Of a DNA stretch of 64,000 nucleotides, positions 6,131-27,530 are shown piece after piece. A program made the translations under genes and the position numbers. The DNA comes from Gekko japonicus (Eukaryota). The notes under the pieces were generated by a model that was not told where the DNA came from, ran no database searches, and saw only the letters and a program-made list of their open reading frames with translations. Location: NCBI RefSeq assembly GCF_001447785.1, contig NW_015172565.1, positions 347,947-411,946 of the forward strand, in the 5' to 3' direction. Numbering within the stretch: the stretch's first letter is position 1; each line of letters starts with the position of its first letter.

Positions 6131-6339
6131 GGACTCTTTTCACGTTAACGCCAAGCTCCCTAATCGGTTGCTTGGAAGCGCCTTTGACTCCTCGTGGACA
6201 TGGGAGGCTTAGGGTCGTTCGCTTTCGCAGCGCAAGGAGCGCAGAAACTGACATGGCACCGAAACCACAACACTGTAGAAAACAGACACAAACTACACTC
6301 GTTGTCGCCCGCTATAACTCCCGCACGGGTTCCTCATAC

Positions 6340-6367
6340 CTGAAATTACCGCCAACGGCGCCGCCAT
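6340..6367 (-). CDS. NUP205: Nucleoporin NUP205, coding exon 1 (MAAPLAVIS, phase-1 end)
   Basis: Minus strand reads aaaATGGCGGCGCCGTTGGCGGTAATTTCAG|gtatga inside a CpG island; resembles the vertebrate NUP205 N-terminus (MATPLAVNS) and splices in frame to exon 2. Confidence 0.93.
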
Positions 6368-6860
6368 TTTGGAAACTCTGTGCGATCCCAAAGGTCGTCT
6401 CTTCCGATAGGCCCAGAAATATAGGAAGGTGACCACAGTAATGCCGGCATTAAAAAACAATAAACAAACCGGATTTTTCTGTTACTCAACTGAGAAATGC
6501 CAGGACCAGGTCTCCCTTATTGTTTGCCATCCACATTTGCGGATAGCGCCTCAGTTAACGGAATTAGATGGACGCCAAGCGTACAGGCTCAGGTAGCCTG
6601 GCTAATCAACATTGCGGGGACCCGAAGCAATGGTCTCTGGGAACTGTAGTTCCAGTCTGCTTCACGCCGAAAAGGCGGGAAAGGTAGTGCCAAAGAACTC
6701 TTATTAAGCGACTTCTAGTTATTTGTCCAAGTAGAGAGTTAAAGGAAAAACCAGTTAGGTTTGGGACACACACAGCCGTTTTTTCTCTAGGTGGTGCCGA
6801 TGTTTTCATATTTCTTTGCATGACTCTCGCGGCCGAAATGCTTGCTGGCCCCAAAACAAT
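6368..6860 (-). promoter_or_regulatory. NUP205 CpG-island promoter with ZNF143/ACTACA motif and E2F site
   Basis: CpG-rich; tgggaactgtagt at 6638-6650 (reverse of ACTACAnnTCCCA); ggcgggaaa at 6674-6682; YY1-like aaaatggcggc at the start codon. Confidence 0.75.
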
Positions 6861-7145
6861 GTTCTTGCCTTGGGAATATTACATTGTACACAGTACAAGA
6901 AGCAAAACTAGGCCACCTGTAAATAAAGTGTTTAAACACATTTTCGGGACTCCCTAACTATGCAGAACAGTAGCCTTGTTCATAAATTACAGTGAACGCA
7001 TGTACACTTGATTGTTCTTTGTATATGTAATTCTCCCGTTACAGCCTATCCATGTACAGCTGAATGTGTGCTACAAACACCGTGTACTGGTCCCCGGTTT
7101 CGTTGGTTAAAGTGAACGCATGTTGGACCTTTCTTACAAACGCAC

Positions 7146-7298
7146 GTTGTTGTTGTTGTTGTTCAGTCGCACAGTCGAGTCCGACTCTTCGCGACCCCAT
7201 GGACCAGATCACGCCAAGCCTTCCGGTCTTCCGCCGTCCTCTGAAGTTGGCTCAATTTCATGTTCGTTGCATCTATGACACTGTCTAACCATCTCATC
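7146..7298 (-). mobile_element. BovB/RTE 3' fragment
   Basis: (CAA)n tail and ggggtcgcgaagagtcggactcgactg terminus on the minus strand; similar to copies at 9.2, 20.1 and 24.8 kb. Confidence 0.85.
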
Positions 7299-7608
7299 TG
7301 GATCCCCCTGAATTAGAGCTCATCCCCAGACTACAGAGATCCGGGGAAAGTAGATGTTTTGGAGGGTGGCCTCTGTGGCATTGTACCCTACTAAAGTCCC
7401 TGTCCTCCCCAGCCTCCCCCCCCCCCCCCCTCCCCCGGGTGTGGGGCTGGCAACAAGGCAACTATGACTTTGTGAATTAACCACAAGAGGGATCATGCTC
7501 CAGGAACAGTACAGCTGAGAGTTAGCGAACGTTAGAAAGGGAATGGGAAACCTTAGTCTGCTCTGCATCACTTCCAGAAAATGCAGACGGGGGGGGGGGG
7601 GGGGGATG

Positions 7609-7610
<2 letters not shown>

Positions 7611-7655
<45 letters not shown>
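7611..7655. repeat. (GT)n microsatellite preceded by a poly-G run
   Basis: Direct reading. Confidence 0.95.
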
Positions 7656-7657
<2 letters not shown>

Positions 7658-7799
7658 CAGGAGTCCTCCTCCTCCTCTTGCCGTGCAGTTCCTCTCGGAT
7701 TCCCAGGAAATACTCTTGACAAACAAGCTGCCCTATCTCTCGAAGAAGCCGGAAGCTCAGAGGAGCTACGCTGATGGTTTTAATTATCAGAGCCTTGCA

Positions 7800-8640
7800 G
7801 AGTACTCCTGTGCCGTGAGATCCACTCGAAATAGGCTCGCAAAATCACCGAGTTGATCTCCTGGGCGACGCAGCCCGCGCCGGGCGAAAGAGGACGGGGA
7901 GGCTTCCGCGCTAGGAAAGGGAGGGACCGGCGGCTTCCGAGCGTCCATCCGGCGGGCGCACGTGCTGTTTACTCCGCCTCCTTGTGTGGCTGTGAGCTGA
8001 GACTCAGCTTCGCCGGATTCTCGCTGGGGAGACGCTGGAGCGGCTGGATCGAGGAGGCGTCTTGTGAGGGGTCTGGTGGGTGAGTAATCGCTGCAGCAGT
8101 GACTGCTGGGGGATGAGTAAGCGCCGGCTTCGTCGGGAGCCTCCAGTCCTCGGCTCTTCCCCGTCGCCTCCTGTCTCACTCTGGTCAGGCGCTGGGAGGT
8201 TCCCTCGGAAGCGGAGCGAACCAGACCGGTTGCTCTGCCCACAGCGAGGGCTCATCAGTTCCTTCTCCCCAGGATGTGAAGGGCCTTCTTTTCGAGAGGT
8301 CTCCGCCTTTGGGGGGTCTGGTCTGGCCGAGGGAGGGAGCCCCTTGGGGATCCGCAGGCCTTGCCCCCCGTGGAGCTTCGCCTCCGGCTGGCCTGCAAAC
8401 TACGGTTCGGCATGGCTGGCCCGTTCAGTGGCCCTAGTCTGTGTGCTTCATCCTTTAGGCAGTAACGACTTTCAGGCAGTTCTTGAATTAAGGATTCAAG
8501 AGAATCTGATTCAGTGTAGTGTGCTGACCAAGGATTTTCAGGCTAAATGATTTCCCCTCCCTCTTTCTTTCTTCGTTAATCCTCGGCAGGCTTGTGGTTC
8601 TGCTTCAGGCGTGTCGATTTTGGTTTTTAGGAACTGAGTG
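7800..8640 (+). promoter_or_regulatory. POLR3H: CpG island and probable non-coding exon 1 of POLR3H (donor gtgagt at 8080; alternative gtaagc at 8117)
   Basis: High CpG/GC; donor gg|gtgagt; the ATG-bearing exon downstream is preceded by a splice acceptor (ccccctgccag at 10817), which implies an upstream exon. TSS not determinable from sequence. Confidence 0.7.
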
Positions 8641-9193
8641 GGGTATCTAAAGAGGAATGATCCTGGCTTAGAGGAGGCACATGGGGTACCTTACAGAAGC
8701 TAATGTGTAGGGGCCTGGGTTTTTTAGGGGGGAGGGATGTTCAGGCACTTGTTTGAAGGCAGGGTGGGCTGATTTCATTCATCAGGAGCAATGATTTAAA
8801 TCAAATCACACATTTAGAAGTTTGAACGTGTACTTAATGGACCTGTATGTTGCTATAACAGTTCAAGCATTCCCACTTAAACGCATACCTTATAGCTGCA
8901 AAGTTGTATATGCGTAGATAGAAAATATATATCTGATTCTCATTGGGTACATGATAATGGCCTTGGCTGTAATCATCCAAAATGTTCTAGAACAGACTTG
9001 TAATTAACATACCAAAACAGATATGGGAAATCCCCATCTTGTTTGGCTGATAATTATAAATAGTCATACTCTTAAAAATTAAATACATCATAGTGGGTAT
9101 AAAAGAATGGGGGGAAAGCCATGCATATGGGCTCTGTGCGTAGTTTTGGTGTGATGGAGAAGTGCAGCTAAATAAGTAGATGGTAAGGGTAGA

Positions 9194-9356
9194 AGACGGG
9201 GACGGCAAAGGATGAGATGGTTAGACGGTGTCATCGATGCAACGAACAGGAAATTGAGCCAACTTCAGAGGACGGCGGAAGACAGGAAGGCCTGGCGGGA
9301 TCTGGTCCATGGGGTTGCGAAGAGTCGGACTCGACTGTGCGACTGAACAACAACAA
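9194..9356 (+). mobile_element. BovB/RTE 3' fragment with TSD
   Basis: GRQRMRWLD-coding end, (CAA)n tail, aagggtaga at 9185-9193 and 9357-9365. Confidence 0.85.
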
Positions 9357-9578
9357 AAGGGTAGATGGAGAAGAGAATGTTTTCTGCTGTTGGGAAAGGG
9401 GAAAAGATTTGCTTTTGATGAAGACAAAATTGGTTTTGAATATGACAAAATAAATATACCTGTCAATAAGCATAGTTATGTTCCCCCCCCCCCAGTTGTC
9501 TGACCAATTAAAGTGATCTCTGTGGCTTCTGAGTAAAAAAAACTTCCTCAGTCTTACTTTGGAGGACAGAAAAGATCC

Positions 9579-9941
9579 CGTTATGAAAACAGAAACAATA
9601 CATTTGCTCGCGTCTGATAGTTCTTGAAAAAAGACTCAGGAATCTTGTTATGTCTTAATGTAATAAAGACATGAGTGAGCTTATGCACAGTCTATATTAA
9701 AAGAGCATTGCAAGGATTGACCTAATGGGCCAATCAGAGAAGCCTTTGCCTTCGGCGGGAACCACTCTCATTGGTTCCAAGCTCCATATTCCTATTGGTT
9801 GTTATCTGTTTGTTGGGTGTGGTTTTGCCCGTTCAAATCATATATAAGCCAGCCTTGTTCTATGAAGTTTGTCTTTGTGTTATGAGCTGAATAAAATGAA
9901 ATCACTTGTTCAAGAAGCTGCCTCGATCTCAGTTCATAATA
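9579..9941 (+). mobile_element. Probable solo LTR in POLR3H intron 1
   Basis: Ends (c)gttatgaa...ttcataat(a) are inverted and resemble mutated TG...CA; internal CCAAT boxes, tatataag, then aataaa in U3-R order. Confidence 0.5.
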
Positions 9942-10165
9942 AATCTTAAATAATGTAGTGAGATGCGGTTTTCATTCCTCAAAGTCCTTGTGGATATCCT
10001 ATCATCTGAGCCTAGGAGGGACCATTCTTTGTATGGACACAACTTTTTAGATTCAGGTAGCAGAATATTCTTGTTTGGCTTCAGCAGTAATGCTACATCT
10101 GCTGTGGCAATTTCTGAAAGAGGATTTTCTCTTTGGAGAAAATTGCTAGGTTCTATGTCCTATGC

Positions 10166-10449
10166 GGTTCAAGACCCGGGTGCCGCAAGACAGGGTGAGC
10201 TCCTGTCTCTAGTTCCAGCTCCTGCCAACCTAGCAGTTCGAAAGCAAGAAATTGCAAGTAGATTAATAGGTACCACTTCGGTGGGAAGGTAACAGCGTTC
10301 CGTGCGCCTTGGCGTTTAGTCACGCCGGCCACATGACCACGGAAACGTCTTCGGACAGCGCTGGCTCTTCGGCTTTGAAACGGAGATGAGCACCGCAACC
10401 CTAGAGTCGGATTCGACTGGCTTTCGAGCAAGGGAACCTTTACCTTTAC
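10166..10449 (+). mobile_element. Sauria SINE, 5'-truncated
   Basis: (ACCTTT)n tail; 13-bp TSD ctatgtcctatgc at 10153-10165 and 10450-10462. Confidence 0.9.
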
Positions 10450-10841
10450 CTATGTCCTATGCTAATGAACGAATGTCTATATCACAACTAAAACTGACAC
10501 GGTATAAAGTATATGATCTGCACATTGTGGAAGGTGAGAATAAAGCATTTGCCCTTTTGGTCCTGGCCCATGTAACTTGTTAAGCTTATCAATGCCTTCT
10601 CATTTTTAGAAAAGATTTTCTTATATAAAACATCTTCAAACTTCATATATGCTTCAGCTATGATTTTTCTGGATAACATAGCTCGGTATTTCATACTGTC
10701 CAAGTAGTAGGCATTTAGTGGTTAAACAAAATAGAAAGTTGACCAATGAAAGATTTCTGACAACTATAATTGCAGAAAAGAATGTTCTCTCTCACTCTGC
10801 ATTTTCCCCCCTGCCAGGAACATTGCTTTTGCTTTGCCAAT

Positions 10842-10952
10842 ATGTTTGTGCTAGTGGAAATGACAGATACTGTGCGAATACCTCCATGGCAATTTGAAAG
10901 GAAGCTTAATGATGCAATCACAGAAGAATTAAACAAGAAGCTAGCAAATAAG
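10842..10952 (+). CDS. POLR3H: RNA polymerase III subunit RPC8, coding exon 1 (exon starts at 10818 with 24 nt of 5'UTR)
   Basis: [37 protein letters not shown]|gtaaag; recognisable RPC8/RPC25 N-terminus. Confidence 0.96.
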
Positions 10953-11455
10953 GTAAAGTTTAGAGTGCTGTAGGCCAGTGCTTGATTAACATATATATAT
11001 ATAGGGCAAACCATGGTTGCCATCATCACAACAAAAAAGCTGACCTCTAGCCTTAATTCAGTCCCTCTCCAATTTCTCATAATTTCATTATTGCTTTAAG
11101 AAGCTTGATTTAATTCACCTACCACTACTGAATGGTTTTCACATATAAACAAGGAATGTCAAAACCTGCATGCACATGCTTTTAATGTCATACAACAAAG
11201 CATATTGATGTGAAATGATAAAAAGAGCTTCTACTGAGAATCAGTGTGAGGCACTACAATAAAAGCATTGCTGAAAATACGACGCCATAATGAAGTTTCT
11301 AAGTGCCATGGCAACCTGGAACCTGGGAATTTTTGAGCCCTGTTAGAGGGCTGTAATGGGAATATATTCCAAAGTCAGAAGCCTTGATATTTAGCTACAT
11401 ATTCAAAAGTGTTAAAGAACACTGTTAAAGAACAGTGTGGTTCTTTACTATGACC

Positions 11456-11660
11456 ATATGAAGCTGCCTTGTACTGAATCAGACTGTTAGAATATCTATC
11501 TTGGATTGGCTAGTCTGACTAGTCTGACAACAGTTCTCCAGGCAAAGAGACGTCTTTTCCAACCTATCACCTGAGATCCTTTAACTAGAGAGGTCAGAGA
11601 TTGAACCTGGTAGCTTCAGCATGCAAAACGTTATCACTGAACCTTAGTCTCTCCCCATAA
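11456..11660 (-). mobile_element. Degenerate tRNA-derived SINE (Squam2-like)
   Basis: Similar to 31478-31693 (atgaagctgcctt...gattgaacctgg). Confidence 0.6.
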
Positions 11661-12042
11661 TACTAGTCATGGTGCAAATTGATACTTTTAATAAGTGTAA
11701 TGTGCAAACAGCTGTCCCCAGTCATTGCCAATTTTAACAGACTGGATAGAATTGGGAGCAAATTAAGTTCTGTATCTCTCCATTGCTAACACTTGTTGTC
11801 TAGGTGTACTGTAATAAAATGCAGGAGAGCAGAAAAATAAAGAGTCAAAATCAACTTTTTTGGTTGCTCTGGGATACATATGGCAGTATCCCTTTGGAAA
11901 TCTATTTTTGCCAAGGTTTCTGTATGAACCACTTCTATCCATTCAGTTATTATGCTTCAGTTCACCAGGCTGGTTTATTTGTATGGCCTTTCTTGTGCAT
12001 AAATTCTGATATGCTATTTAAGGAAGGTTTAACATATTTTCT

Positions 12043-12178
12043 TGTTCCAATGTATCTGAAATAGTGTGCCTTGCACATGAAAGCTCATACCTTGATTAAA
12101 CCTTTGTTGGTTTTAAAAGTGTCACTGGACTCTAAATTTGTTCTACTGCTTCAGACCAACATGGCTGACCATCTGGAT
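12043..12178 (+). mobile_element. Penelope-like element terminal fragment
   Basis: tctgaa..gtgtgc..gcacatgaaagctcatacc..ctttgttgg..gtcactggactc; repeated at 24.2, 27.5, 52.2 and 54.6 kb. Confidence 0.65.
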
Positions 12179-12233
12179 ATATTTTCTCATTGTTACTGGG
12201 ACCTATTGCTATGTAAGCTCTTTCCCCAAACAG

Positions 12234-12330
12234 GTTGTATATAACGTTGGCCTCTGTATTTGTCTGTATGATATCACAAAGCTGGAAGATTCCTATATAT
12301 TTCCAGGAGATGGTGCGTCACACACAAAAG
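12234..12330 (+). CDS. POLR3H: POLR3H coding exon 2
   Basis: aacag|[32 protein letters not shown]|gtttgt; 97 nt. Confidence 0.96.
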
Positions 12331-13613
12331 GTTTGTCAAATGTTTATCTTAATCTAGTCTCTTTGTGAAATTAAAACTATAAGAAACCTGAGGGAGATTT
12401 GCAATTGCTGACAATTGCAGGTCTTTAACAGTTCTTTTTTTAGAGGGATCTTAAGAAATGCTGACAACATCACAGCAGCATAAATACTCCTTTACTCCTT
12501 AATCTACATAATGACTGCAGTCCAGGAGAAAGTGCCAAGTACATCTGGGAAGACACTGTTTCATAAAGCCAAAATAGTTTGAGGAATGAAGATTCCGTTT
12601 AATCCTTAGTACCATCTTCCCTTGAGACAGAGTTATGGTGACTATTCTGATATGCGACAACATTTCCTTTTCAATATGTTTTTGTATAAATGATTGTCAT
12701 CTTTTTCCTGGACTGTTTGGCTATTTTTCATCCACTGCTTAAAGAAAATGAAAACTACTGGCAGGAGGCTTATCCCATTCTGTATTTGATTTGCTCATGC
12801 CCATATTTCCTGGTGACCTCACTTTCATGTATCTTGCAGACGGAATCTTAAGAAGATAAATTCCATCTCTTTGGGTGGAAAGAGGGCAGTCCTATCTACA
12901 TTTCCCTTACTGCTGCACTTCATCCAGCTGCTGTCTTATTTGATCGAGTTTGAGCTCAAAACCAGTTATTTTTCAATCTTTTAGACTTGCAGAAATTGGA
13001 TTCTTGTGCTCTGTATGTTATTAGTACCATATGAGCCAGAAGCCTAAAGGAAAGGCTTTAGGATTGGGAAGGGCAAAATCAGTGCTGTGTGTGAACTGTG
13101 TGAACATGACAGGTGAAAGATATCAGAGGGTTGTTGATGACCTTGTTGAGGGAAAGTGTGACTATTAATCAGTAGTATAAATACCAAAATGTCTCTTACA
13201 GGTACCGTGGGTCTGGTTTTGTTGCTCTGCTTTGCATTTACCTACATGCATCAAGCACTACTCTTCCCATCTATTTGCCCCTTCTTAAGGAAACATGAAG
13301 TTTTTGAGCAAGTACAATTTATACAGAGTCTTTCCATTGCTCATGCAATCTCTTAATACTTTCTGGAGACACCTTTCCATGCAGACCTGAGTGTGGACCC
13401 CTCTTCTTTTAAAAAATTGTCTGCTAAAAACAGTCCCCAAATGTAGTGGAACTTTACATAAATGAGTAGAGAATACTACCATAATGCTGATGCCTGATTG
13501 TGTCAAGTTGTGTTTATTGAAAATACAGATTTCTAGAGAATGCAAGTACAGGATAACTGTGCTTTAATGTACTTAAGGACGTCACATTAATTTATTATCC
13601 TTGCTGTTTTCAG

Positions 13614-13700
13614 TGCATTTTCGGTATGTTGTATTTCACCCTTTTCTGGATGAAATTCTGGTTGGAGAGATAAAAGGCTGCAGTCTGGAAGGAGTCCGTG
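13614..13700 (+). CDS. POLR3H: POLR3H coding exon 3
   Basis: ttcag|[29 protein letters not shown]|gtaagt; 87 nt. Confidence 0.95.
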
Positions 13701-13796
13701 GTAAGTCTTAATTTTACTACTGAGGAGGTTGGAACTCAGAAGTAAGGAAGGAGTAAGTCCTGAAGGGAATGTCATTATAGTGGACTGCAACAGTGG

Positions 13797-14030
13797 AGAG
13801 CCAGTGTGGTGTAGTGGTGACTCTAATCTGGAAAAATGGGTTTGATTCCCCACTCCTCCATGTAAAGCCTGCTGGGTGACCTTGGGCCAGTCACAGTTCT
13901 CTCAAAACTCTCTCCCCCCCAGCTAGCTAACAAGGTGTCTATTGTGGGGAGAGGAAGGGAAGGCGACTGTAAGCCTTACAGAGACTCCTTACAGTAGAGC
14001 AAATTGGGGTATAAAGACCAACTGTTCTTT
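13797..14030 (+). mobile_element. tRNA-derived SINE (Squam3-like)
   Basis: gagagccagtgtggtgtagtgg head with A/B boxes; family repeated several times in the window. Confidence 0.75.
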
Positions 14031-14798
14031 TAAATTATTGGTATACTTGTTGAGTTGCCTGTCTGGAGGGTGTTCCGCCCACTTAGTAATGTCTAAAACT
14101 TGTTTTGAGCTGCCAGTTAACATCACTAGATTGCAGAACTTAACCACTTGAAGTGTGGGAATTATGTTTCTCCCCCCAGGGAACTGAGGACAAAGGACCC
14201 TAAATGTGCAACTAATTCCCAACTGCTTTGAACCCAAGACAGTGTGCTGCTATCATACTGATATTGAGGCCTCTTTTGGTCCTGAATGCAGTGTATCTTA
14301 AATTTGTAAGCCACTTGGATTGTCCAGTTCTCTGTGTTGCCTGGCCTGTGAGAAAGACATTTATTGGGATAGGATGTTAACATGGAATATCAGTTCAAAG
14401 GAAGCTACTGTTCCTTTTGTGTTTGCTTTTAACTTGATTGTAGTTGCCTGTAGTAACTGGAATCTCTCCTTTGTAGCCGTATGACATTGCCAAAAAGCCT
14501 GTGCACACCAAGGAGTGGTAGGCTTTATTTTTTTCAAAAGCAAATAACACATACATAGCGGGAGAAGAAGAGAAGAATATCACTTGTGGTTTAAAGTATT
14601 ATAGTGCCAATAACAGATTTGTTTGGATGTTCAGATATATTAAAGGCAGCTTTAATACTGTGCTATAGCAGGGAGAATGCTGAGTCTGTGTTCAAAATCT
14701 TATTCTGGAGTGTCACTGGGTAACCTAGGAAAGCCTTTAAAATGTGGTGTCACATTTTGCCTGAATAATCTCTATATTAATTTGAATTCTTCCTGCAG

Positions 14799-14862
14799 TT
14801 TCTCTTGGGTTTTTTGATGACATCATCATTCCTCCAGAATCTCTACAGCAACCTGCCAAGTT
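14799..14862 (+). CDS. POLR3H: POLR3H coding exon 4
   Basis: tgcag|[22 protein letters not shown]|gtatcttt; 64 nt; followed by a U12-type donor. Confidence 0.95.
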
Positions 14863-15330
14863 GTATCTTTTGAACAGCTTCACCCTGACTGATGTATAAA
14901 AATGTGCTTATCTTAAAACCGACCCTGTGTGTACAAAGCATGATAAGTTGCTTTGTTGCAACATGTTCTGGCCACTATCATTAAAGAATGGCCAATCAGT
15001 GTAACAGCTGCCCTGAGCCTGCTTGTGGGGAGGGCGGGGTATAAGTTTGATAAAATAAATAAGCCACCAGAAAAAGCATGTGCAGAATTTTTTAGTTTCC
15101 GCAGACTAGTGTAGTGGAGGGCAATGGAGAGAGTAAGCATATGTGGCTGGGTCAGCTGAGGGCTGGTAAATAGTAGTCATCTACTTGGCTTCCATCATTT
15201 ATATACTAATTGCCAAGACGCCCCCTCTGTGCAGATATCTAAATCCGCACATCGGGGGCACTTGGAGGGCAAAGAGATTTCCCTCCACACTTGGGGCAGT
15301 CCTCAGGTGTGCAGGAGAATCTGAAAAGTA

Positions 15331-15605
15331 GAGAGCCAGTTTGGTGTAGTGGTTAAGTGTGCGGACTCTAATCTGGGAGAACTGGGCTTGATTCCCCACT
15401 CCTCCACTTGCACCTGCTCATGTGACCTTGGGTCAGTCACAAGCTCTGGCACAGCTGTCCTTGAAAAAGAGCAGTTTGTGTCAGAGTTCTCTCAGCCCCA
15501 CCCACCTCACAGGGTGTCTGTTGTGGGGAGGGGAACGGAAAGGAGTTTGTAAGCCACTCTGAGACTCCAAGTGAAGAGCAGGGTATAAATCCAATCTCTT
15601 CTTCT
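15331..15605 (+). mobile_element. tRNA-derived SINE (Squam3-like)
   Basis: gagagccagtttggtgtagtggttaag head, (CTT)n tail. Confidence 0.8.
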
Positions 15606-15695
15606 ATATGGGGGATATTTAAATCCCCCAAAAAGTAAAAGAGCGTTCCCTGTGCTCTGGGAACTCTGCCTCACTGCCGTTAGGGGGGGATGCTT

Positions 15696-16000
15696 GGCAG
15701 GCCAGTGGCTGGAAACCGCTCAGGCCTCGGTGCCAAGGGGACAGTAGAAGGCTCAGCAGGCCCAGCGGCTGGAAGCTGCTCAGACCTCACCACTGCGGGT
15801 GGGGGGGGGCGGGAGAAAGCTCAGCGGGCCTGGCAGCTTGAAGCCGCTCTGGCCTCGTCGCCGGTGCTGGGGGTGGGTGGGAGAAGGCTCAGAGGGCCCA
15901 ACGGCTGGAAGCTGCCCAGATCTTGCCATTGCTGCGGGGGGGGTGGGAGGAGAAGGCTCGGAGGGTCCAGTGGCTGGGAGCTGCTCAGGCCTCGCCGCCA
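15696..16000. repeat. GC-rich minisatellite, about 5 diverged units of 60-70 nt
   Basis: Recurring gaaggctcag..ggccca.cggctggaagctgctcaggcctcg motif. Confidence 0.75.
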
Positions 16001-16377
16001 GGGAGGGAAAAGGCTTACCTGCGGCCACTTCCTCCTTAGTGCTGAGTTGCTTCTGGAGGCTGGGAGCCTTTGGGAATCCTCCTCCCCGTAACCCCCCCCC
16101 CCGCAAGTATTGCGGGTCCCGCTTCTTGTATACTCTTATCTCCACCAAGAATTCCTTCCTAATCACTTCCCAAGACCTGCATTGGGTTCTGTTTTCTTGC
16201 AGTGCAAACTAAAACAGGGTATGTGTTAGTAGATACAGCATGGTTTGTACATGAAGCAGAGTGAGAGAGGGCTACATAAAGAGATGAATGATGGGATTTA
16301 AAATACAGAAAGGGTTTCATGTTATGAACTTCAGTGCCTTGTTACTGTATTTCTGCCTTAACCTTTAATATGGCCAG

Positions 16378-16585
16378 TGATGAAGCTGAGCAGGTGTGGG
16401 TCTGGGAATATGAGACTGAAGAAGGAGCCCATGATCTGTATATGGATACAGGGGAGGAGATCCGTTTCCGTGTGGTGGATGAGACCTTCATTGATACATC
16501 CCCAACAGGCCCAAGCTCTGCACAGCCTTCTACCTCTGGTGCTGCAGATGAGGCCCAGAAGAAGGAGGCTCCCTATACTCTTGTG
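16378..16585 (+). CDS. POLR3H: POLR3H coding exon 5
   Basis: gccag|[47 protein letters not shown]...KKEAPYTLV|gtaaat; 208 nt. Confidence 0.96.
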
Positions 16586-17047
16586 GTAAATAACAAAGCT
16601 TCTCTCTGCACAGCCATTTGATATTAACTCTACTCAAAAGACCTTAAGTCAAAGCTAACATTGCACCATGGTGGTCACACACGAGGAAAGGATGCCAGAG
16701 AAATAGAAGATCCCAACACCAGCTGATAGGTTGCGTGTCTCAAAACAATGGGGCAGAATTTGGTAGATGAGTAACAATTAGCATGTGCAGCTATGCACAC
16801 TTGTTCTTGAGAAATGTGTGTGTGGTGTGTAATCAAAATCTAAACCTGTGATTAAGCATACAAGCTGTTGTATATCCTCAGGGGTAGGGGTGTTTTTTCA
16901 AATAGCCATTATTTTAAGTCATATTATCTTAAAATCCTTGTTGACCACCATTTAATGGAATGCTCAGAATATAGACGAATACTACAAAGGTTAAATGACT
17001 AATGGCAATGTTCTTAAAACTTTAATCTGTATTCTTTCTCTGGACAG

Positions 17048-17101
17048 GGATCAATCAGTGAACCTGGCCTAGGCCTCCTATCCTGGTGGACAAACAGTTA
17101 A
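17048..17101 (+). CDS. POLR3H: POLR3H last coding exon
   Basis: gacag|GSISEPGLGLLSWWTNS*; the six exons total 621 nt = 206 aa plus stop, no disruptions. Confidence 0.95.
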   Translation, partial: GSISEPGLGLLSWWTNS

Positions 17102-18174
17102 CCAGTGGGAGAGACTATTCTGAACCATGGAACTTTGCAAACTGGAAAAGCCTACTTTATCTTCTATGGACAATGGCAGTGAAAAGGCAACTTTGTTTTC
17201 TCACTTCTGCTTTGCATCAGGTCCACATCAATCTGAGTGGGAGCATCTAGTGTGATATCTGCACAGAAGAACAATCTATGAAGCTCTGACAGTGTACACT
17301 CAGAAGGTTCTGATCCCTCTAATAAGTGGGATTGTGTAAAAGTTCTTATGAATTCAGCCTGGAAAAACATTTAAAGCAGATAAATGAAATCATCCTCAAT
17401 GAGAGTTCTTGGAGGAGCGAAGTATTTCATACTGCTGCTTTTCATTTCATGATGTGATGGAAATGGGGAGGATGTTGTGAAAGCTAGCCCTTGCTTTGAC
17501 TGCTTTTGTTCCATTTCCCCCATTAGAATGGAGATTCTTCCATTAGCCAAGAGTGTCTGGGAAAGCAATGAGCTGGCCCTTCACAATTAACAAACCTTGG
17601 TGAGGAAGCCTCAGGCAGGAATCTGGCCCACAAGTGGGCTGAAATGTTGCCAAAAGGACCCTAAGCAAGTGCCCTTCCTAATCCTACTGTTTTCTGGGAA
17701 AACACACACCTGCCATCGTGTTTAGCTGTGATATTGCATGGATTTGGGTGGGTAATATTGTTTTCTGTAAACAAGACCTGAAAGCAACTAGAAGACTGAT
17801 CACTCATCTAAATGGATCTTTCATGCTATTGCATGACTGATGAAAAAATTCAGTTATCTGCTGCTAGTTTTCAATATTAGGAGGCAGATGTTTCTGCCTT
17901 ATGGCTGAGAGCTTTTCAGCCATTGAATGTGCGTGCAGAAGTTGACAGCGGGTGCTGAAACTCTTGTCTTCTGAACAGAAAATAATCACTTCCAATTGGA
18001 GAAGCAGTGGTGTAGGAATGAAGCCTGTAAGAGATTGGGCACCTGGCAAAGGGTGACAACTGTAATATATAACAAATTTCTGTATCTTATGTGGTGTTAC
18101 TGAATTAGTTTCTGGAGGATTATCCCTGTGAGGATTCCTCTAAAGCACCTTAGATGCTATTTAGCTGAAATTGT

Positions 18175-18180
18175 AATAAA
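18175..18180 (+). terminator. Probable POLR3H polyadenylation signal
   Basis: First AATAAA noticed after the stop codon (about 1.07 kb 3'UTR), followed by T-rich sequence. Confidence 0.55.
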
Positions 18181-19089
18181 ACTTGATAATGGATTTTCCT
18201 TTCATATTTATACTGTGTAGCAATGGCTAGAGGATTTTTGAAATAGTTCTGTAGACATCACTTCAAAAACTTTGAAACACAAACTGGAGAGTCTTGATTA
18301 CTGGACCTGGAGGGCAATTGGATAAGATGCATATACCATATTTACTGAAAAGACAACCCTGAATGGAAGACACCCCCATATTATACACCCCAAAAGGTTA
18401 TTATAGGATATAGCTATAATTTGTATGTAAGATGACCTCCCCCATCCCCATTTTAATGGCATATTAACACACACACCCCAATGTTGCATTTGACTAATAC
18501 CGTAATGTATGGCTTATTGCAGTTCCTGTTGGTGGTATTTTCTTTTCAGGGGGCAGAGCCTTTTTTGTAACGTATGTACGAATGTGGACCACTACTGGTG
18601 AAATTCATAAACATTTAACTGCTTTTATTTAGACTGTAGTCCTAAAGATTGATCTGGAAACAAAGTACTAACTATAGCCAAATTTTAATGAGCTTCAAAC
18701 AAGGCCTCCACTGGTCTTTTTAGGGCTTTGTCAATCTGTACAACATTAGTTGGATTCAGCAGTTCACTAGCAGAAGGCCCTAATGGTCATTGGATCTTTC
18801 TTGTTTACCATCCCCTCTGATAGCCTGCTGACAGAAAAAGAGAGGGTGACTTTGCTCCCTTCCACTCCTCACTGCAGCCCACTGACCTAGGTGGCTGTTA
18901 CTCCCTATGTTAACTTTGTTGAGGTAAGAAGGGATTTGTTGGGAGAGGGGAAAGTGCAGAAAATCTGTGATCCTTACATTAAGTAGATTGCTGGATCAAA
19001 CCCATTATGTTGCTCTTTTATCCACTGATCCATAGTTCTTGCTTTTTGTGCTACTTGTTGCTGGAACAGGTCCAGAGAAACAGATACAC

Positions 19090-21126: not shown

Positions 21127-21897
21127 TATGTTTCCTTTACTTTTAATTAAACTGGAGCAATTCCTAAATTTGGCACAGCTGTCATCCTTCCTCCTTTTCA
21201 TTTTGATATAGATGGCTATTATGCTGGTGTCCCTGCTCCAATGTTTTGCCCTGAAGAAAGGAGGGGGAGCCCAGAACAGCCTCTCATATTTTTTAAATAG
21301 AAGGCCAAGAGCAGGAGAGTTAGCATTAAAGGGGCTGAACTACATGCAGGAAATCCAAAATGTATTTGTCCTTTCCCCCCCTTTTCTTAGCAAACTACAG
21401 CGGGGGGGGGGGGGGTTAACCATTTTCCTAGTGTGATCTTCAGCCAGATGAAAAATATAATTTTGTTTAGGAAACAAAAAACCCACAACCCACTCTGTCC
21501 TTGGGCTTTGATGCTCATACAGAGACGTTTTAGTTGTTGTTGTTGTTTTGGGGGGGGGAGAAAAAACAGCAGATCTGGTCCCAGGTCTTGCACATAAGGG
21601 TGGCTTCAGCCTAAAGCATCGCCAGCTTTGGAAGGAAGCTACTGCCAACAAGCTTTTTGCGCACCGATGGATTCGTGGTGGTTTCCCTGTACATCGCCTT
21701 AGCCCTAAGCGGCCAGGCGTCTCGTACATATAGATGTTATTTCACAGGTGAAGCCTCTGACAGTATACCCACCTTGTCTACTCTGACCCTATACTTAAGT
21801 TAGCGTGCTGTTGGAGAAGGGGAAGACGCTAATCAGCCTTGCCAACATGAAGGCTGCTGGACGAAGGAAGGGTCCATGGCGGAGCGGCTCTTCATAC

Positions 21898-21924
21898 GGA
21901 AATTACCCTCAGCCGCGCGGCTTT
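21898..21924 (-). pseudogene. Decayed duplicate of NUP205 exon 1 (ATG changed to AAA, 1-nt deletion before a retained GTATGA donor)
   Basis: ccaagaaagccgcgcggctgagggtaatt vs ccaaaatggcggcgccgttggcggtaatt, 21/29 ungapped; reads KAARLRVIS vs MAAPLAVIS; flanks colinear with the NUP205 promoter. Confidence 0.8.
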
Positions 21925-22330
21925 CTTGGAAAACTCGTTCAGTGGTCGTCGCTCGACCTAAAGCGCCGCCGTTGACGAGAGGCCCGCAAAGTGCCAGAGA
22001 CGACAAAGCTAGTGCCGGTGTAGAAACTCCACTTTCCCCACACGCCGCTACCTGCTGGCGCAGTTTCTCGAAATACTCTTTTAAGACCCTGGGCCACTGT
22101 TGCTTTATAAACCTCAGGGTCTTCCAGGTTGAGAATCCGAACCTTAGGAGTACTGGCGAGGTGGTTTTTACTAACCCCGAAAGTGAGGACCTGACAGCAA
22201 TGGAAATTGGGAGCTGTAGTTCCTGGACCCTCTCGGCGGGAAAGGAGATTGAAGAGTTTTTAGACGACTTCGTTGTCTGCGACGGCGTCAAATATAATTT
22301 TGTCTGAGAAAGAGGTTCAATTAAACTGCT
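21925..22330 (-). promoter_or_regulatory. Duplicate of the NUP205 promoter (orphan CpG island)
   Basis: tgggagctgtagt at 22208-22220 and ggcgggaaa at 22235-22243 in the same order and similar spacing as at 6638-6682; several additional colinear blocks. Confidence 0.75.
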
Positions 22331-22974: not shown

Positions 22975-23042
22975 AATTACACCACAGCAATTCTTTGCAG
23001 CTGGCCACACTGGAAAATAGCGGCTGAAACGCCCTGTCTGAA

Positions 23043-23125
23043 CGCACCCTTAATGTGAAATAGCCAACACCATGTGGATGCAGCGCACCCTTAATGTGAA
23101 ATAGCCAACACTATGTGGATGCAGC
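23043..23125. repeat. 41-bp tandem duplication
   Basis: cgcacccttaatgtgaaatagccaacac(c/t)atgtggatgcag occurs twice. Confidence 0.9.
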
Positions 23126-23818
23126 CTTCCGTGGATGTAGATTTAATTGATTTCAGTTGACAATCACTGCATTTACAATAATAATAATAATAATGCTTTC
23201 GATTTATTAATCGCTTTCCCCACAAGTGGGCTCAAAGTGATTTACAGTTACTCTTTAGACAGGGGACTAACAATGTTTTTCATAGGGGATAGGGAAGACA
23301 ACATATAATTCATTTAAGTTGCACACGCCGTACTGTCCGATGGAAAAGCCTGTGGCTTTTATATAGAGGAGACAAAGTACTATCATTATATTCTTATTTA
23401 AGGAAGCCCTTATGGCTGGTTAGGAATATGATAGGGCTTAGCTTCTAATGCCACCAGCAGCTGGAAGGTGAGGCTCAGAGTGGAGGACTAACATCTGGGA
23501 TGCTTCCCCCCACCATCATGTCAGCAAAGAACCCCAGCTTTTTGCATTCAACTATTTTGTGAAGCATCTTTTATTGTAAAACACCAAAACTGGACCTACA
23601 TCTTCAAAGACAGAGTTACTGAACATCATTCTCTATGAGAAGCATATCCTGAGAAGGCAAGTTTTGCTCCAGGCATTTCCATTCATACCCACTCATCTAC
23701 TAAGCTGATTAACTGAAACTGAGCACTGATTACACAGCATTTGCTTAATGTATTTCATTAAGCCTCCAAAAACAAACAAAACTATTCCCTTAACTCATTT
23801 ATCTATCAATAGATAGTA

Positions 23819-24046
23819 AAAAGGTAAAGGTTCCCTTGCTCGAAAGCCAGTCGAGTCCGACTCTAGGGTTGCGGGGCTCATCTCCGTTTCAAAGCCGAAG
23901 AGCCAGCGCTGTCTGAAGACGTTTCCGTGGCCATGTGGCCGGCATGACTAAACACCAAGGCGCACGGAACGCTGTTACCTTCCCACTGAAGTGGTCCCTA
24001 TTTATCTACTTGCAATTTCTTGCTTTCGAACTGTTCGGTTGGCGGG
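23819..24046 (-). mobile_element. Sauria SINE, 5'-truncated
   Basis: 14-bp TSD atcaatagatagta at 23805-23818 and 24047-24060. Confidence 0.9.
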
Positions 24047-24842
24047 ATCAATAGATAGTACATGACTTTTGAACTACTTCCCTCTCTATTGGTGACATCT
24101 ATAAAACAAAATTGACATCAGCTATATATATCTCATTCCTCCCCCCACTATTGCTGACTGTATAAAATTATCAAATTAGACTAAAACTTGATCAAAACCC
24201 ACCCTTTGTTGGTCTTAAAGGTGCCACTGAACTCAAACTTTGTTCTGTTGCTTCAGACCAACACGGCTACCCATACTGAATCTGGCATTATCTTAGTTAA
24301 CATTAATATCCATATGATCCTGTGTACAATTCTTCTATAGTATTAGAATTCCTCTATATACTTCCCTACATATTGAATAAACTCAGACAAGAAGCCGTTT
24401 TGCTAAGTAAGTAAAATGAGTTATTCTTGCTTGTGAACAAGAAGAGAGAAATCTGAGGGCGAAGAGCTGTTTTTTCTCTGCCAGCAACCCTGCCACTGTG
24501 ATACTGCTGCTACTGACTGAGTGGTGTTTTCACTGTGCATTTATTTGCCTATCCATCTGCTAGGAATGTTGTCCGTCTACCAACATTGTTATGGATGCAG
24601 AACTGTGTATTTGAGAATGGACACTGCTGTTGATATATTTATTCTTATGACTTGCTAATTGTTTTTGAGTTGCTGCTGTGCATAGGATTTCTAGCTTTCA
24701 TCAGTGCAAGCAGCAGCACCGTGATGTCGGAATGACCATCCAATGTATTTTTCCAGCTTCCTCGTTTAGAACAGAAAACTAGTTAGGGGGATGTTATTGA
24801 AGTATCAAATTATGGCTGAACTAGAAAAGTGAACAAGGATAA

Positions 24843-25138
24843 GTGGTTTGCCCTTTCGAGTTCCCTGGAAGGCCAGATACTGAAGCTGAACCTCAAATAC
24901 TTTGGCCACCAAATGAGAAGGGAGCACTCACTGGAGAAGACCCTGATGCTGGAAAGACTAAAGGTAAAAGAAGAAGAAGGGGACGGCAAAGGATGAGATG
25001 GTTAGACAGTGTTATCGAGGCAACGGACATGAAATTAAGCAAACCCCGGAGCACAACGGAAGACAGGAGGGCCTCCTGTGATGTGGTCCATGGGGTCAAG
25101 AAGAGTCAGACTCGACTGTGCGACTGAACAACAACAAA
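24843..25138 (+). mobile_element. BovB/RTE 3' fragment
   Basis: RRRRGRQRMRWLD-coding end and (CAA)n tail. Confidence 0.85.
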
Positions 25139-25539
25139 ATAAAGAGTCAGTGTGGTATAGCAGTTAGACCAAGATCTGGGAGATCCAGGTTTGAATCCCA
25201 GCCACTCACATATTCTCAGCCTAACCTGCCTTACAGGGTTGTTGTGAGGAAACATGAAGACGAAGCAATGTGGTAAAGCCACTTTCGGTCCCCATTGGGG
25301 AGAAAAATGGGATACAAATGAAGTGAATAAATAACTACATAAATCCAAAAGGCAACTAAACGCACAAGCATTAAGTTTAAAAGTGATTAAATAAATAAAT
25401 AAAACCGGACCTCTAAACAATAACAAACACCGAGAAGAAAAATTACTGCCAAGTGGTATCACTACAAATACAGCCAGTCTTTTCCTTAAAAAACCGAAAT
25501 ATTTCAATATTACACTGAATATAATTTTGGGTTTCAAAG

Positions 25540-26100
25540 CGGGGACTCGCGGAAGGGTACTGAGGACCAGCGTTATCTTACAGGCTCCAGAATGTAGAAC
25601 GAGCCAAAGCTCCTGAAGCGGTATCGCATTCTGCCCATTCGATTTCTCACGCCCCTCTTCCCTTGCAGTCCTTGACTCCAGCGGAATTTATTGCATCCAT
25701 TCGATAAGGAAGAAATACTCCAGGAATACGCCACAGAATGTGGCTTCGGGATAGTCCAACCTAAAGAGGCGACCGGGAAGTCTTGAAGGCTCCATCGAGC
25801 TAGGTCAGCCCTTTAGTTCCTTTGGAGTACACGAGAACAAGCGCATACCCTACTTCCGCAGCTTGTGAATCGTAGCGTGAAGAAGCTGCTGAGCCTGTTG
25901 AACCTCTGAATTGACAAGCATGCTCACCGGCTAGCCACTCCGCCGCCGGTAAACCACGGTCCTTCCCACCCCAAGACTACAATTCCCATCATGCTCTCCC
26001 CACTGTCGCGTCCGACCTTTTCTTTCCGCCCACCCGCCTGCCCATCCGTCGGCTCGTGCGCATGCGCGTTGGAAGCAGCGTCCGGGGCAGGCAGGCAGTC
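25540..26100 (+). promoter_or_regulatory. CNOT4 CpG-island promoter
   Basis: Canonical ZNF143 composite motif actacaattcccatcatgc at 25976-25994; NRF1 palindrome tgcgcatgcgc at 26057-26067; GC boxes. Confidence 0.8.
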
Positions 26101-26316
26101 TCTCCCTAATGTAAGATGGTGGCCGGTCTGGCAGCGGAGCGCGCAGAGCCTGAAGATTACCCGTCTCTCACATAAAGGTCGTCGGTGGAGCTCCCCCCAG
26201 TCCCTTTCCCGCTGCCACGGAAGAGAGAGAGGGCGAGAAGAAGAGCGAGCCCTAGAGAGCCCCGCCGCCCCCGCCGCCAGACAGCCGGTCGCCGTGGAGC
26301 AGAGACGACGAGGCGG
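26090..26316 (+). other. CNOT4: CNOT4 non-coding exon 1 (5' boundary approximate)
   Basis: Within the CpG island; strong donor gcgg|gtgagt at 26317; the next recognisable exon on this strand is the CNOT4 ATG exon. Confidence 0.75.
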
Positions 26317-27530
26317 GTGAGTGAGAAGCAGCAGCCATCGCAGGGGCTGGGGGAGCCGGGTCTGCCTGGTTACGAGAGAGCGGAGGCCTCGTGGGGAGCC
26401 TGCAGGCCTCGGGCCCCCCTTCCTCCGCCGGCTGCTTCAGCCCTTCAGTGGGCACTGGGGCTCCCTTTGCCTGGAGGAGCGGAAGGAAGGAAGGGAATCG
26501 GGCGAGCCCAGGGCGGCTCCTCTGCCCGCAGTCAGGGCCCACCAGCCCTTCCGAAGGGGCTTCCTGCACTCGGTGGTCTGGGTCGGGGGACTGGTGTGGG
26601 GACGGAGTCTGCGTGGGATCCCGAGGCTATGCTGAGATTTCTCAGGATGGGGGGCCTGGCAGTAAACAGGAGCGGAGGGCTCTGGTCCAGGAGCTTCGCA
26701 TCCCCCTCGCGAGTGGCGTGTGTGTCTGTGGAGTAGGTGAGAGGCAGCCGAAGCTGTTGCTGGAGGCTACGCGTCTTTCGTGGATTTTTCGTAAGGGTTG
26801 GCTGGAAATGTTTCTCTTTTTCCCTCCGCACGCTGAAGCAGGCGGAAAAAAACCCCAGGCTTGTTAAGATCAGCACGTGTATTGGTGGGTGGCGATTAAC
26901 TGTATGAGTGTTTCCTTTGCAGTTATTCTTGGTAGGCCCTTTGACTTTTCCTGGGATTCTTTCACTTCATGTATGCTTTCCTGCCTTTAAAATAGATATC
27001 TTTGTTTTTTGGAATGCAGGGGTTCAGCTACAGAATTTTGCTCCTATTGAATGTCATCAGTTCTTTCCCTTTTAACATGCAAATACAATTGCTCGTACTG
27101 TCCACCTTTTTTGTTTTAAGGGTTTTATGGTTTTCTTAGCATATCTATTTATAATGATACAGGTTTTTCAGGAGAGAGAGTAATTCCAGGGAAGGATACA
27201 TCCTGTGTCTGATGTAAGCTAGAAAAATACTGAAGCTAGTAAGTGGTGCCTGAAAGCTATCTTGTATGTGCTTGGTATACTGACTCTATGCCTCTTACTG
27301 CTGAGCATGGAATTCAGCTCTGTTGAAATCTTGATCACTCCAAAATGTTACTTGTGTCCTCAGATTATATGGACTTTAGTAGGAATGGTCATATGCTTGT
27401 TGTAGTTGTGCTTCTGTATTTACTTTAACAAAAATCAGTTGATTTTAACTGAATTCTTGGTACCCTCATTAACATTACCTTGGTTATAGATATAATGAAA
27501 GCAAATTGGAATACTGAAATTATATTTTAA

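What the first reader, a model, noticed from the sequence alone, without database searches (positions are those of the whole stretch)
6330..26905. Duplicated NUP205/CNOT4 head-to-head promoter module flanks POLR3H, with reciprocal decay of the two copies
Seen: about 6330-8640 and about 21885-26905 share many short blocks in the same order and orientation, covering both the NUP205-facing half (6330-6760 vs 21885-22330) and the CNOT4-facing half (7670-8640 vs 25650-26905). Copy B is longer partly because of SINE, BovB and Penelope insertions. Copy A keeps a functional NUP205 exon 1; copy B keeps the functional CNOT4 exon 1. Known: NUP205 and CNOT4 are head-to-head neighbours in human. Inference: the shared promoter region was duplicated and an intron-containing POLR3H landed between the copies, giving each original gene its own promoter and one spare promoter half to POLR3H. 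Possible mechanisms include staggered-break repair or circular-DNA integration.
Basis: partly seen in the sequence, partly recalled or inferred. Interest (0 to 1): 0.92.

Follow-up and report, generated by a model that had tools for sequence, protein, structure and literature searches.

The report
Duplicated promoter module flanks relocated POLR3H
In this gecko-like lizard genome the essential RNA polymerase III subunit gene POLR3H lies between NUP205 and CNOT4, flanked by two old, diverged copies of their 5' region, and RNA reads show it uses the spare CNOT4-type first exon: a clean example of a known way for a gene to get a promoter.

Summary
The core observation holds. Four colinear, same-strand blocks link 6328-6684 to 21886-22245 (NUP205 exon 1 with its splice donor, a ZNF143-like site, a shared 11-mer). 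One gapped block of about 285 bp links 8080-8364 to 26319-26632, directly after two GTGAGT donors. Local scores are about 10 SD above dinucleotide shuffles. The pairs are reciprocal best hits across all 64 kb. The colinear chain beats 200 of 200 local shuffles.

The gene identities are right:
- NUP205 is on the minus strand, with its ATG at 6367.
- An intron-containing POLR3H is on the plus strand at 10818-18195.
- CNOT4 is on the plus strand, with its ATG at 53162.

RNA-seq shows a GT..AG junction from 8079 to 10818. POLR3H's non-coding exon 1 therefore lies inside copy A's CNOT4-type half. A transcript contig from a second species shows the same junction.

Copy B's NUP205-type exon has AAA in place of ATG and a weakened donor, yet its CpG observed/expected ratio is 1.0.

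Not supported: similarity across 7670-8080 and 8400-8640, and a Penelope insertion.

Not tested:
- The ancestral state. The tool that fetches loci from other species was closed.
- RNA evidence for copy B.

The scan's other notes on this locus come from this same window, not from other DNA.

Verdict: a real, old duplication, most likely tied to a DNA-level relocation with first-exon capture. Moderately interesting.

The parts
6340..6367 (-). NUP205 exon 1, coding part (ATG at 6367-6365, nine codons plus one base, donor GT at 6339-6338). The 5'UTR extends upstream on the minus strand into about 6500-6700.
   Evidence: Direct reading of the sequence. RNA reads fall in bins 6300-6699 of run X15. 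Downstream exon ORFs at 4187-4417 and 1863-2051 match NUP205 residues 6-59 and 58-116.
6328..6375 (.). Copy A, block 1: the end of NUP205 exon 1, its ATG and donor. Homologous to 21886-21932.
   Evidence: 36/47 identical, blastn E = 0.002. z = 9.5 for this half against shuffles.
6618..6684 (.). Copy A, block 2 (ZNF143-like ACTACA/SBS site on the minus strand, 6618-6653) plus a shared 11-mer with an E2F-like core (6674-6684). Homologous to 22187-22245.
   Evidence: 30/36 identical. Motif scan and 11-mer positions. The spacing to block 1 is 290 bp in copy A and 301 bp in copy B.
7991..8079 (+). POLR3H non-coding exon 1. This is the minimum extent; reads also fall in the 7700-7899 bin. The donor GT is at 8080-8081.
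   Evidence: Junction from 8078/8079 to 10817/10818, GT..AG, in 5 reads from 5 starts (X15) and 1 read (X16). A 1198-nt transcript contig of organism B (X11) covers 7991-8054, then 22 diverged letters, then 10817-10954.
8080..8364 (.). Copy A, block 3: the start of POLR3H intron 1. Homologous to the start of the predicted CNOT4 intron 1 at 26319-26632.
   Evidence: 180/248 identical with gaps; score 31 against a shuffle maximum of 20-21. Reciprocal best hit in the whole window.
10818..18195 (+). POLR3H exons 2-7:
- 10818-10952 (ATG at 10842)
- 12234-12330
- 13614-13700
- 14799-14862
- 16378-16585
- 17048 to about 18195 (stop codon at 17099-17101, AATAAA at 18175)
   Evidence: tblastn with vertebrate RPC8 proteins; the best is P0158 (Paroedura picta) at about 96%. 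Splice sites were read directly. Pfam SHS2_Rpb7-N and RNA_pol_Rbc25 hits. polyA signal.
21886..21932 (.). Copy B, block 1: a relic of NUP205 exon 1 (minus-strand sense). It has AAA where copy A has ATG, a 1-nt deletion and G>C at the last exon base, and GTATGA retained.
   Evidence: Alignments; direct reading.
22187..22245 (.). Copy B, block 2: the ZNF143-like site (22187-22223) and the shared 11-mer (22235-22245). It lies in a CpG island: 21850-22300 has GC 0.53 and CpG observed/expected 1.01.
26100..26318 (+). Predicted CNOT4 non-coding exon 1, not verified by RNA. The upstream promoter carries ACTACAATTCCC (25976), an NRF1 palindrome (26058) and a YY1-like site (26113). The donor GT is at 26319.
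   Evidence: Motif scan and CpG island. The donor is positionally homologous, within about 20 nt, to the RNA-verified donor of copy A. The CNOT4 coding exons lie downstream on the same strand.
26319..26632 (.). Copy B, block 3: the start of the predicted CNOT4 intron 1.
53162..53335 (+). CNOT4 first coding exon (residues 1-58, RING domain). The next coding exon is at 63566-63766.
   Evidence: Identical over 58 residues to PDB 1e4u NOT4, E = 6e-39. ORF reading.
7151..7298 (.). A BovB-type tail fragment inserted in copy A after the duplication. It is in the opposite orientation to the BovB-type copy in copy B at 24860-25143. The two SINE copies in copy B (22625-22912, 23820-24047) are also post-duplication insertions.
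   Evidence: Self-blast of the window. BovB-like ORF tail.

Best explanation
What is shown:
- A module of at least 1.8-2 kb exists as two direct, strongly diverged copies about 15.5 kb apart. It comprises NUP205 exon 1 with its upstream ZNF143/E2F-type promoter elements, and the CNOT4 non-coding exon 1 with the first ~0.3 kb of intron 1.
- An intact, intron-containing POLR3H lies between the copies.
- Copy A (6.3-8.4 kb) serves two genes. Its left half is the working NUP205 exon 1. Its right half provides the CpG-island promoter and the non-coding first exon of POLR3H, which splices from 8079 to exon 2 at 10818.
- Copy B's left half is an ATG-less relic of NUP205 exon 1 that is still a CpG island.

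What is inferred:
- Copy B's right half (26.1-26.3 kb) drives CNOT4.
- A genomic copy of POLR3H lacking its own exon 1 was inserted at the DNA level into CNOT4 intron 1, a few hundred bp downstream of exon 1 and in the same orientation.
- The same event re-copied the target from NUP205 exon 1 to the insertion point. This could have been repair of staggered breaks, or replication template switching of the FoSTeS/MMBIR type.
- The duplication gave POLR3H a ready promoter and splice donor while leaving NUP205 and CNOT4 each with an intact 5' end.
- The event is old. It predates the split of the two species seen in the reads. From about 27% mismatch in the best-preserved block, and loss of alignability elsewhere, its age is of the order of 10^8 years.
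For: - Colinear homology far above shuffled and natural GC-rich controls, with reciprocal best hits window-wide.
- Gene identities from PDB, Pfam and protein searches.
- POLR3H has introns at six coding exons, so it is not a retrocopy.
- The RNA-seq junction 8079|10818 appears in two runs of the same species and in a transcript contig from a second species.
- The homologous block starts at the donor in both copies.
- The only CpG island upstream of POLR3H exon 2 is copy A.
- The BovB fragments in the two copies are in opposite orientations, so they inserted after the duplication.
- tblastn finds no second set of POLR3H exons in the window, which argues against a simple 15.5-kb tandem duplication.
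Against: - No outgroup locus could be examined, so 'insertion' versus 'ancestral arrangement' is undecided.
- The promoter and exon 1 sequences of POLR3H and CNOT4 themselves are not detectably similar. Descent of the exon from CNOT4's rests on its position between homologous blocks.
- CNOT4 exon 1 at 26.1-26.3 kb has no RNA evidence here.
- Junction depth is low: 6 reads plus one contig.
- No relic of the presumed donor locus (for example the ACO2 3' end) was seen by eye in 17-22 kb.
- The age estimate uses assumed substitution rates.
Confidence: 0.6

Rival explanations
1. The duplication is real, but the whole NUP205-module-POLR3H-module-CNOT4 arrangement is much older and widely shared, at sauropsid, amniote or deeper level. 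The mammalian ACO2-POLR3H linkage would then be the derived state. On this reading nothing is lineage-specific here.
For: Most of the module is no longer alignable, and only a few probably constrained blocks survive. This fits great age. No outgroup data could be obtained.
Against: A 285-bp intronic block that is still 73% identical would be surprising after more than 300 My without constraint. From my own memory, not tested, POLR3H sits beside ACO2/CSDC2 in both mammals and chicken.
Confidence: 0.2
2. A two-step or larger-unit history. Either the promoter module was first duplicated in tandem and POLR3H was inserted between the copies later. Or a ~15.5-kb unit already containing POLR3H was duplicated in tandem and the second POLR3H was then deleted.
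For: The present structure (copy, 13.5 kb, copy) fits either history equally well. The copy-to-copy period is 15,558 bp.
Against: It needs more events. There is no trace of second POLR3H exons downstream of copy B. An intermediate with POLR3H in CNOT4 intron 1 and no second promoter would trap CNOT4 transcripts.
Confidence: 0.2
3. Copy B's left half is not a decaying relic. It is a working promoter and first exon, either of a divergent non-coding RNA or an alternative upstream non-coding first exon of NUP205. This would be neofunctionalisation rather than decay, and it is not exclusive of the main explanation.
For: CpG observed/expected is 1.01 over 21850-22300. The ZNF143-like and E2F-like sites and GTATGA are retained while neighbouring sequence has diverged beyond recognition.
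Against: The ATG is lost, and the last exon base and the spacing at the donor are damaged.
Confidence: 0.3
4. The similarity is not homology. It is chance or convergent promoter grammar: ZNF143, YY1 and E2F motifs and GC-rich composition shared by housekeeping CpG islands.
For: Block 2 is largely a ZNF143 SBS-type motif, and a further copy of the ACTACA motif sits in the CNOT4 promoter at 25976. Block 3 is GC-rich.
Against: Block 1 covers exon, start-codon and intron sequence that matches no promoter motif I recognise. Order, orientation and spacing are conserved. Scores exceed all shuffles and all other CpG islands in the window.
Confidence: 0.03

Closest known systems
DNA-mediated gene relocation (duplicative transposition with loss of the parental copy), including gap-repair 'filler' insertions and FoSTeS/MMBIR templated insertions. 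Cited from my own knowledge of the literature, not checked here.
   Same: The gene between the copies keeps its introns. The insert is flanked by a direct duplication of the target. There is a single copy in the window.
   Different: The flanking duplication is kb-sized and is itself a two-gene promoter module whose halves are partitioned among three genes. The donor locus and the empty site were not observed here.
Promoter and 5'-exon capture by relocated or retroposed genes, for example retrogenes that recruit nearby CpG-island or bidirectional promoters and gain 5'UTR introns. Cited from my own knowledge.
   Same: A non-coding first exon foreign to the gene splices to the exon that carries the ATG (junction 8079|10818). 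The promoter is a CpG island beside another gene (NUP205).
   Different: POLR3H here is not a retrocopy. The captured exon appears to come from a duplicated copy of the neighbour's first exon, not from the neighbour's own working exon.
Duplication-degeneration-complementation (subfunctionalisation of duplicated regulatory modules). Cited from my own knowledge.
   Same: Two copies of one module each keep a different original function: NUP205 exon 1 in copy A and, by prediction, CNOT4 exon 1 in copy B.
   Different: Only the 5' module was duplicated, not whole genes. One spare half was co-opted by a third gene, and the other remains a CpG island of unknown use.
Vertebrate head-to-head (bidirectional) CpG-island promoters with ZNF143/YY1/NRF1/ETS-type motifs.
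   Same: There are divergent housekeeping genes, a CpG island and ZNF143-like, YY1-like and NRF1 motifs.
   Different: The divergent starts are about 1.3-1.6 kb apart in copy A and about 4.2 kb apart in copy B, beyond the usual 1-kb definition. Part of this distance is due to later repeat insertions.

Membership tests
Insertion flanked by a kb-scale target-site (segmental) duplication | Two copies in direct orientation flanking the insert, colinear over several blocks, above chance | tested here: met
Insertion flanked by a kb-scale target-site (segmental) duplication | An empty site with a single copy of the module in outgroup species | not testable with these tools
The other collections hold no vertebrate genomes. 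Paper searches found nothing.
Insertion flanked by a kb-scale target-site (segmental) duplication | An identifiable donor locus (POLR3H beside ACO2/CSDC2), lost or retained | not tested
   Only this 64-kb window is available. The scan's notes hold nothing on ACO2, CSDC2 or aconitase.
Retrocopy / processed gene | Intronless coding region with a poly(A) tail and short target-site duplications | tested here: not met
   Six coding exons with GT..AG introns.
5'-exon / promoter capture | A non-coding first exon spliced to the exon that carries the ATG | tested here: met
   Junction 8079|10818 in X15 and X16, and in the X11 transcript contig.
5'-exon / promoter capture | The captured exon is homologous to another gene's exon | tested here: inconclusive
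   Exon 1 and promoter give z = -0.5 against shuffles. The intron directly after the donor is homologous, and the exon lies between homologous blocks.
Bidirectional promoter (strict sense) | Divergent transcription starts less than 1 kb apart | tested here: not met
   The NUP205 ATG is at 6367, with reads up to the 6500-6699 bin. POLR3H exon 1 starts between about 7700 and 7991. In copy B the relic exon at 21.9 kb and the predicted CNOT4 exon 1 at 26.1 kb are about 4.2 kb apart.
Complementary degeneration of duplicated modules (DDC) | Each copy has lost a function that the other keeps | tested here: inconclusive
   Copy B lost the NUP205 ATG. Copy A's CNOT4-type half no longer serves CNOT4 but serves POLR3H. 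Use of CNOT4 exon 1 in copy B has not been verified by RNA.

The most novel reading that the evidence does not exclude
One rearrangement inserted a promoter-less genomic copy of an essential Pol III subunit gene into the first intron of CNOT4 and at the same time duplicated the whole NUP205/CNOT4 5' module. This instantly supplied POLR3H with a CNOT4-derived CpG-island promoter and first exon, and allowed the original POLR3H locus to be lost. The left-over NUP205 half next to CNOT4 has been kept as an active CpG island because the CNOT4 promoter needs, or tolerates, its divergent partner. That would be a natural dissection of a two-gene promoter into reusable halves.
Probability: 0.3. Interest if true: 0.7.

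Novelty: new variant of a known kind. Interest (0 to 1): 0.5.

Why it matters
If the outgroup comparison confirms a lineage-specific relocation, this locus is an unusually readable case. It shows how an essential housekeeping gene can change chromosomal address without a retrocopy step. It shows how a kb-scale duplication of the target protects both neighbouring genes. It also shows how a duplicated first exon and CpG island is recycled as the promoter of the newcomer. Finally, it offers a natural test of whether the halves of a divergent promoter work independently. It introduces no new kind of mechanism.

Tried and rejected
I did not try to get them by another route.
- N-terminal extensions of POLR3H gene models from other squamates, run by tblastn against the window, gave only noise with E >= 0.02 and no hit on exon 1.
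- An eye scan of minus-strand ORFs in 17-22 kb found no relic of a former neighbour such as ACO2. I had no ACO2 sequence to search with.
- Paper searches for POLR3H/NUP205/CNOT4 together, for a NUP205-CNOT4 bidirectional promoter, and for POLR3H-ACO2 synteny found nothing relevant. PMC4433680 only lists both genes within 7q33-q35.
- Rfam at gathering threshold finds no RNA family in either copy. There are no tandem repeats in the blocks.
- Tests of the flanks, of the interval between blocks 1 and 2, and of promoter plus exon 1 of the CNOT4 half were not significant. The 'middle' row of that call is void because masked N matched N.
- The first run of the chain test timed out. It was repeated with repeats deleted.
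- The locus-tag trick (finding NUP205 or CNOT4 models of the same annotated genomes) was not attempted. Exon-sized queries cannot reach full-length proteins in the search for homologous proteins.
Exons were searched singly by reference.

Full report
**Genes in the window**

- Stop-to-stop ORFs on the minus strand at 4187-4417 and 1863-2051 match human and Xenopus NUP205 residues 6-59 and 58-116 (E = 7e-24 and 2e-28).
- Upstream of them on the minus strand, an ATG at 6367 opens nine codons plus one base, followed by a GTATGA donor. This is NUP205 exon 1.
- On the plus strand, six coding exons between 10818 and 17101 encode RNA polymerase III subunit RPC8 (POLR3H).
  - The largest exon recovered vertebrate RPC8 models.
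  - tblastn places all six exons. The best match, about 96%, is to the gecko Paroedura picta protein P0158.
  - Pfam finds SHS2_Rpb7-N and RNA_pol_Rbc25.
  - All introns have AG/GT borders, and AATAAA lies at 18175.
- CNOT4 follows on the plus strand. Its first coding exon (ATG at 53162) is identical over 58 residues to the solved NOT4 RING domain. The next exon is at 63566-63766.
- I searched exons one at a time by reference and did not join them into a spliced model.

**Is the similarity real?**

A word-7 blastn of 5.0-10.5 kb against 21.0-27.5 kb gives two kinds of hit. One is strong hits that are interspersed repeats. The other is three weak plus/plus hits in the same order. Smith-Waterman alignment resolves these blocks:
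- Block 1: 6328-6375 vs 21886-21932, 36/47 identical.
- Block 2: 6618-6653 vs 22187-22223, 30/36 identical.
- Block 3: 8095-8364 vs 26354-26632, 180/248 identical with gaps.

An exact 11-mer with an E2F-like core follows block 2 in both copies, at 6674-6684 and 22235-22245. MAFFT shows further small in-register matches between blocks 1 and 2. It also shows that block 3 begins at the two GTGAGT donors, give or take a 20-nt indel.

The controls all point the same way:
- Local scores of 22 and 31 compare with dinucleotide-shuffle means of 10.9 and 13.6 and maxima of 16 and 20-21, so z is about 10. The reverse and reverse-complement sequences, and seven other GC-rich stretches of the window, score 19 or less.
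- Against every 600-bp tile of the window on both strands, the left halves are each other's best hit, and so are the right halves.
- The best colinear chain scores 155.6 bits. With copy B shuffled locally in 300-bp pieces, the mean is 35.6 and the maximum 107, and 0 of 200 shuffles reach the observed value.

Chance and shared composition are therefore excluded. Block 2 is mostly a ZNF143-type motif and could recur independently. Block 1 is exon, start-codon and intron sequence, and the 290 vs 301 bp spacing is conserved.

**What is not similar**

These intervals are no better than shuffles:
- the promoter and exon 1 of the right halves (7700-8094 vs 25700-26353)
- the sequence to the right of block 3
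- the sequence to the left of block 1

Copy B's extra length includes two copies of a SINE also present at 10164-10451 and a BovB-type tail. I could not show a Penelope element. The BovB fragments in copies A and B are in opposite orientations, so they arrived after the duplication.

**RNA evidence**

I had one read-laying run and used it on 5100-11099, with three RNA-seq runs of the same species and one run of a second species.
- A GT..AG junction from 8078/8079 to 10817/10818 is seen in five reads with five different starts in X15 and in one read in X16.
- A 1198-nt contig of X11 (organism B) covers 7991-8054, then 22 diverged letters that correspond to the end of the exon, then 10817-10954. 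It is a spliced POLR3H transcript of a related species.
- POLR3H therefore has a non-coding first exon that ends at 8079, inside copy A's CNOT4-type half. This was already so before the two species split.
- Reads also fall on NUP205 exon 1 (bins 6300-6699).
- Depth is low, and the libraries give no usable strand signal.
CNOT4 exon 1 at about 26100-26318 is a prediction. It rests on the CpG island, the ACTACAATTCCC, NRF1 and YY1-like motifs, and a strong donor. The donor's position corresponds to the verified donor of copy A.

**State of the copies**

- In copy B, the NUP205-type exon reads AAA where copy A has ATG. It has lost one base and the final G before the donor, so it cannot start NUP205.
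- Even so, 21850-22300 keeps 32 CpGs, with an observed/expected ratio of 1.01. The bulk of the window is at 0.05-0.25. This suggests a region that stays unmethylated in the germline and is probably still active.
- In copy A, the CNOT4-type half has not decayed. It has been taken over by POLR3H.
- 'Reciprocal decay' is thus only half right.

**Interpretation**

- The shown facts are the duplication, the intron-containing POLR3H between the copies, and the use of copy A's right half as POLR3H's first exon.
- The inference is that a genomic POLR3H fragment lacking its own first exon entered CNOT4 intron 1 in sense orientation, and that the target from NUP205 exon 1 to the entry point was duplicated in the process. 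This could have happened through repair of staggered breaks or through replication template switching.
- A one-step event avoids an intermediate in which CNOT4 transcripts would be trapped by POLR3H.
- A two-step history, or a larger tandem duplication followed by deletion, cannot be excluded. No second set of POLR3H exons exists in the window.
- About 27% mismatch in the best block, with loss of alignability elsewhere, points to an age of the order of 10^8 years. This rests on assumed rates.

**What remains open**

- The key question is whether the arrangement is derived in lizards or ancestral.
- My recollection is that POLR3H lies beside ACO2/CSDC2 in mammals and chicken, and that CNOT4 and NUP205 are divergent neighbours on human 7q33. 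This is memory, not a test.
- The scan's other notes on this locus (s1-821542, s1-821603, s1-821627) were written on this same window, not on other DNA.

**Verdict**

This is a genuine old duplication of a two-gene 5' module around POLR3H, with first-exon capture supported by a small number of spliced RNA reads and one transcript contig. It is a new and tidy variant of known processes: DNA-mediated gene relocation, promoter capture, and partitioning of duplicated regulatory modules. It is of moderate interest until it is dated against outgroups.

Noticed in passing
window 31619-31690 (-): A full-length tRNA hit inside CNOT4 intron 1 (Rfam tRNA 66.8 bits; ARAGORN tRNA-Ala, anticodon GGC). It could be a real tRNA gene, a tRNA-derived SINE head or a pseudogene; this is not resolved.
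   Followed up: partly
window 10164-10451, 22625-22912 (-), 23820-24047 (-): A SINE family with 93-95% identical copies. RNA-seq depth on it reaches hundreds to thousands where single-copy sequence has 0-3, so it is abundant in transcripts genome-wide. Many reads run on into unrelated sequence at its ends.
   Followed up: partly
window 7151-7298, 9182-9358, 20094-20372, 24860-25143: Four BovB-type LINE tail fragments, 85-95% alike. Their ORF tail carries the typical ...MRWLD...REAWR...HGV.KS.T.L.D ending. Two of them sit in POLR3H intron 1 and one in each copy of the module.
   Followed up: partly
window 34910-37117 (-): An open 736-aa ORF with a reverse-transcriptase domain (RVT_1, E = 1.6e-35). 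It is a LINE ORF2 piece in CNOT4 intron 1. A further RT fragment lies at 37319-37939 (+).
   Followed up: partly
window 57267-60673 (+): A 711-aa ORF followed by overlapping ORFs of 229 and 254 aa, in a CpG-rich stretch (observed/expected up to 0.9). There are no Pfam hits, although the last ORF looks RT-like by eye. It is probably a fairly young retroelement in the CNOT4 intron between the first two coding exons. It is only described here.
   Followed up: partly
window 15746-15999 and 40619-41184: A GC-rich 68-bp tandem repeat (3.7 copies) in the POLR3H intron before exon 6, and a 281-bp tandem repeat (2 copies, 89%) in CNOT4 intron 1. The second accounts for the CpG-rich patch near 41 kb.
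   Followed up: no
window 7420-7660: Poly-C, poly-G and (GT)23 tracts lie between NUP205 exon 1 and POLR3H exon 1. The read tool skipped 7579-7663 as repeat.
   Followed up: no
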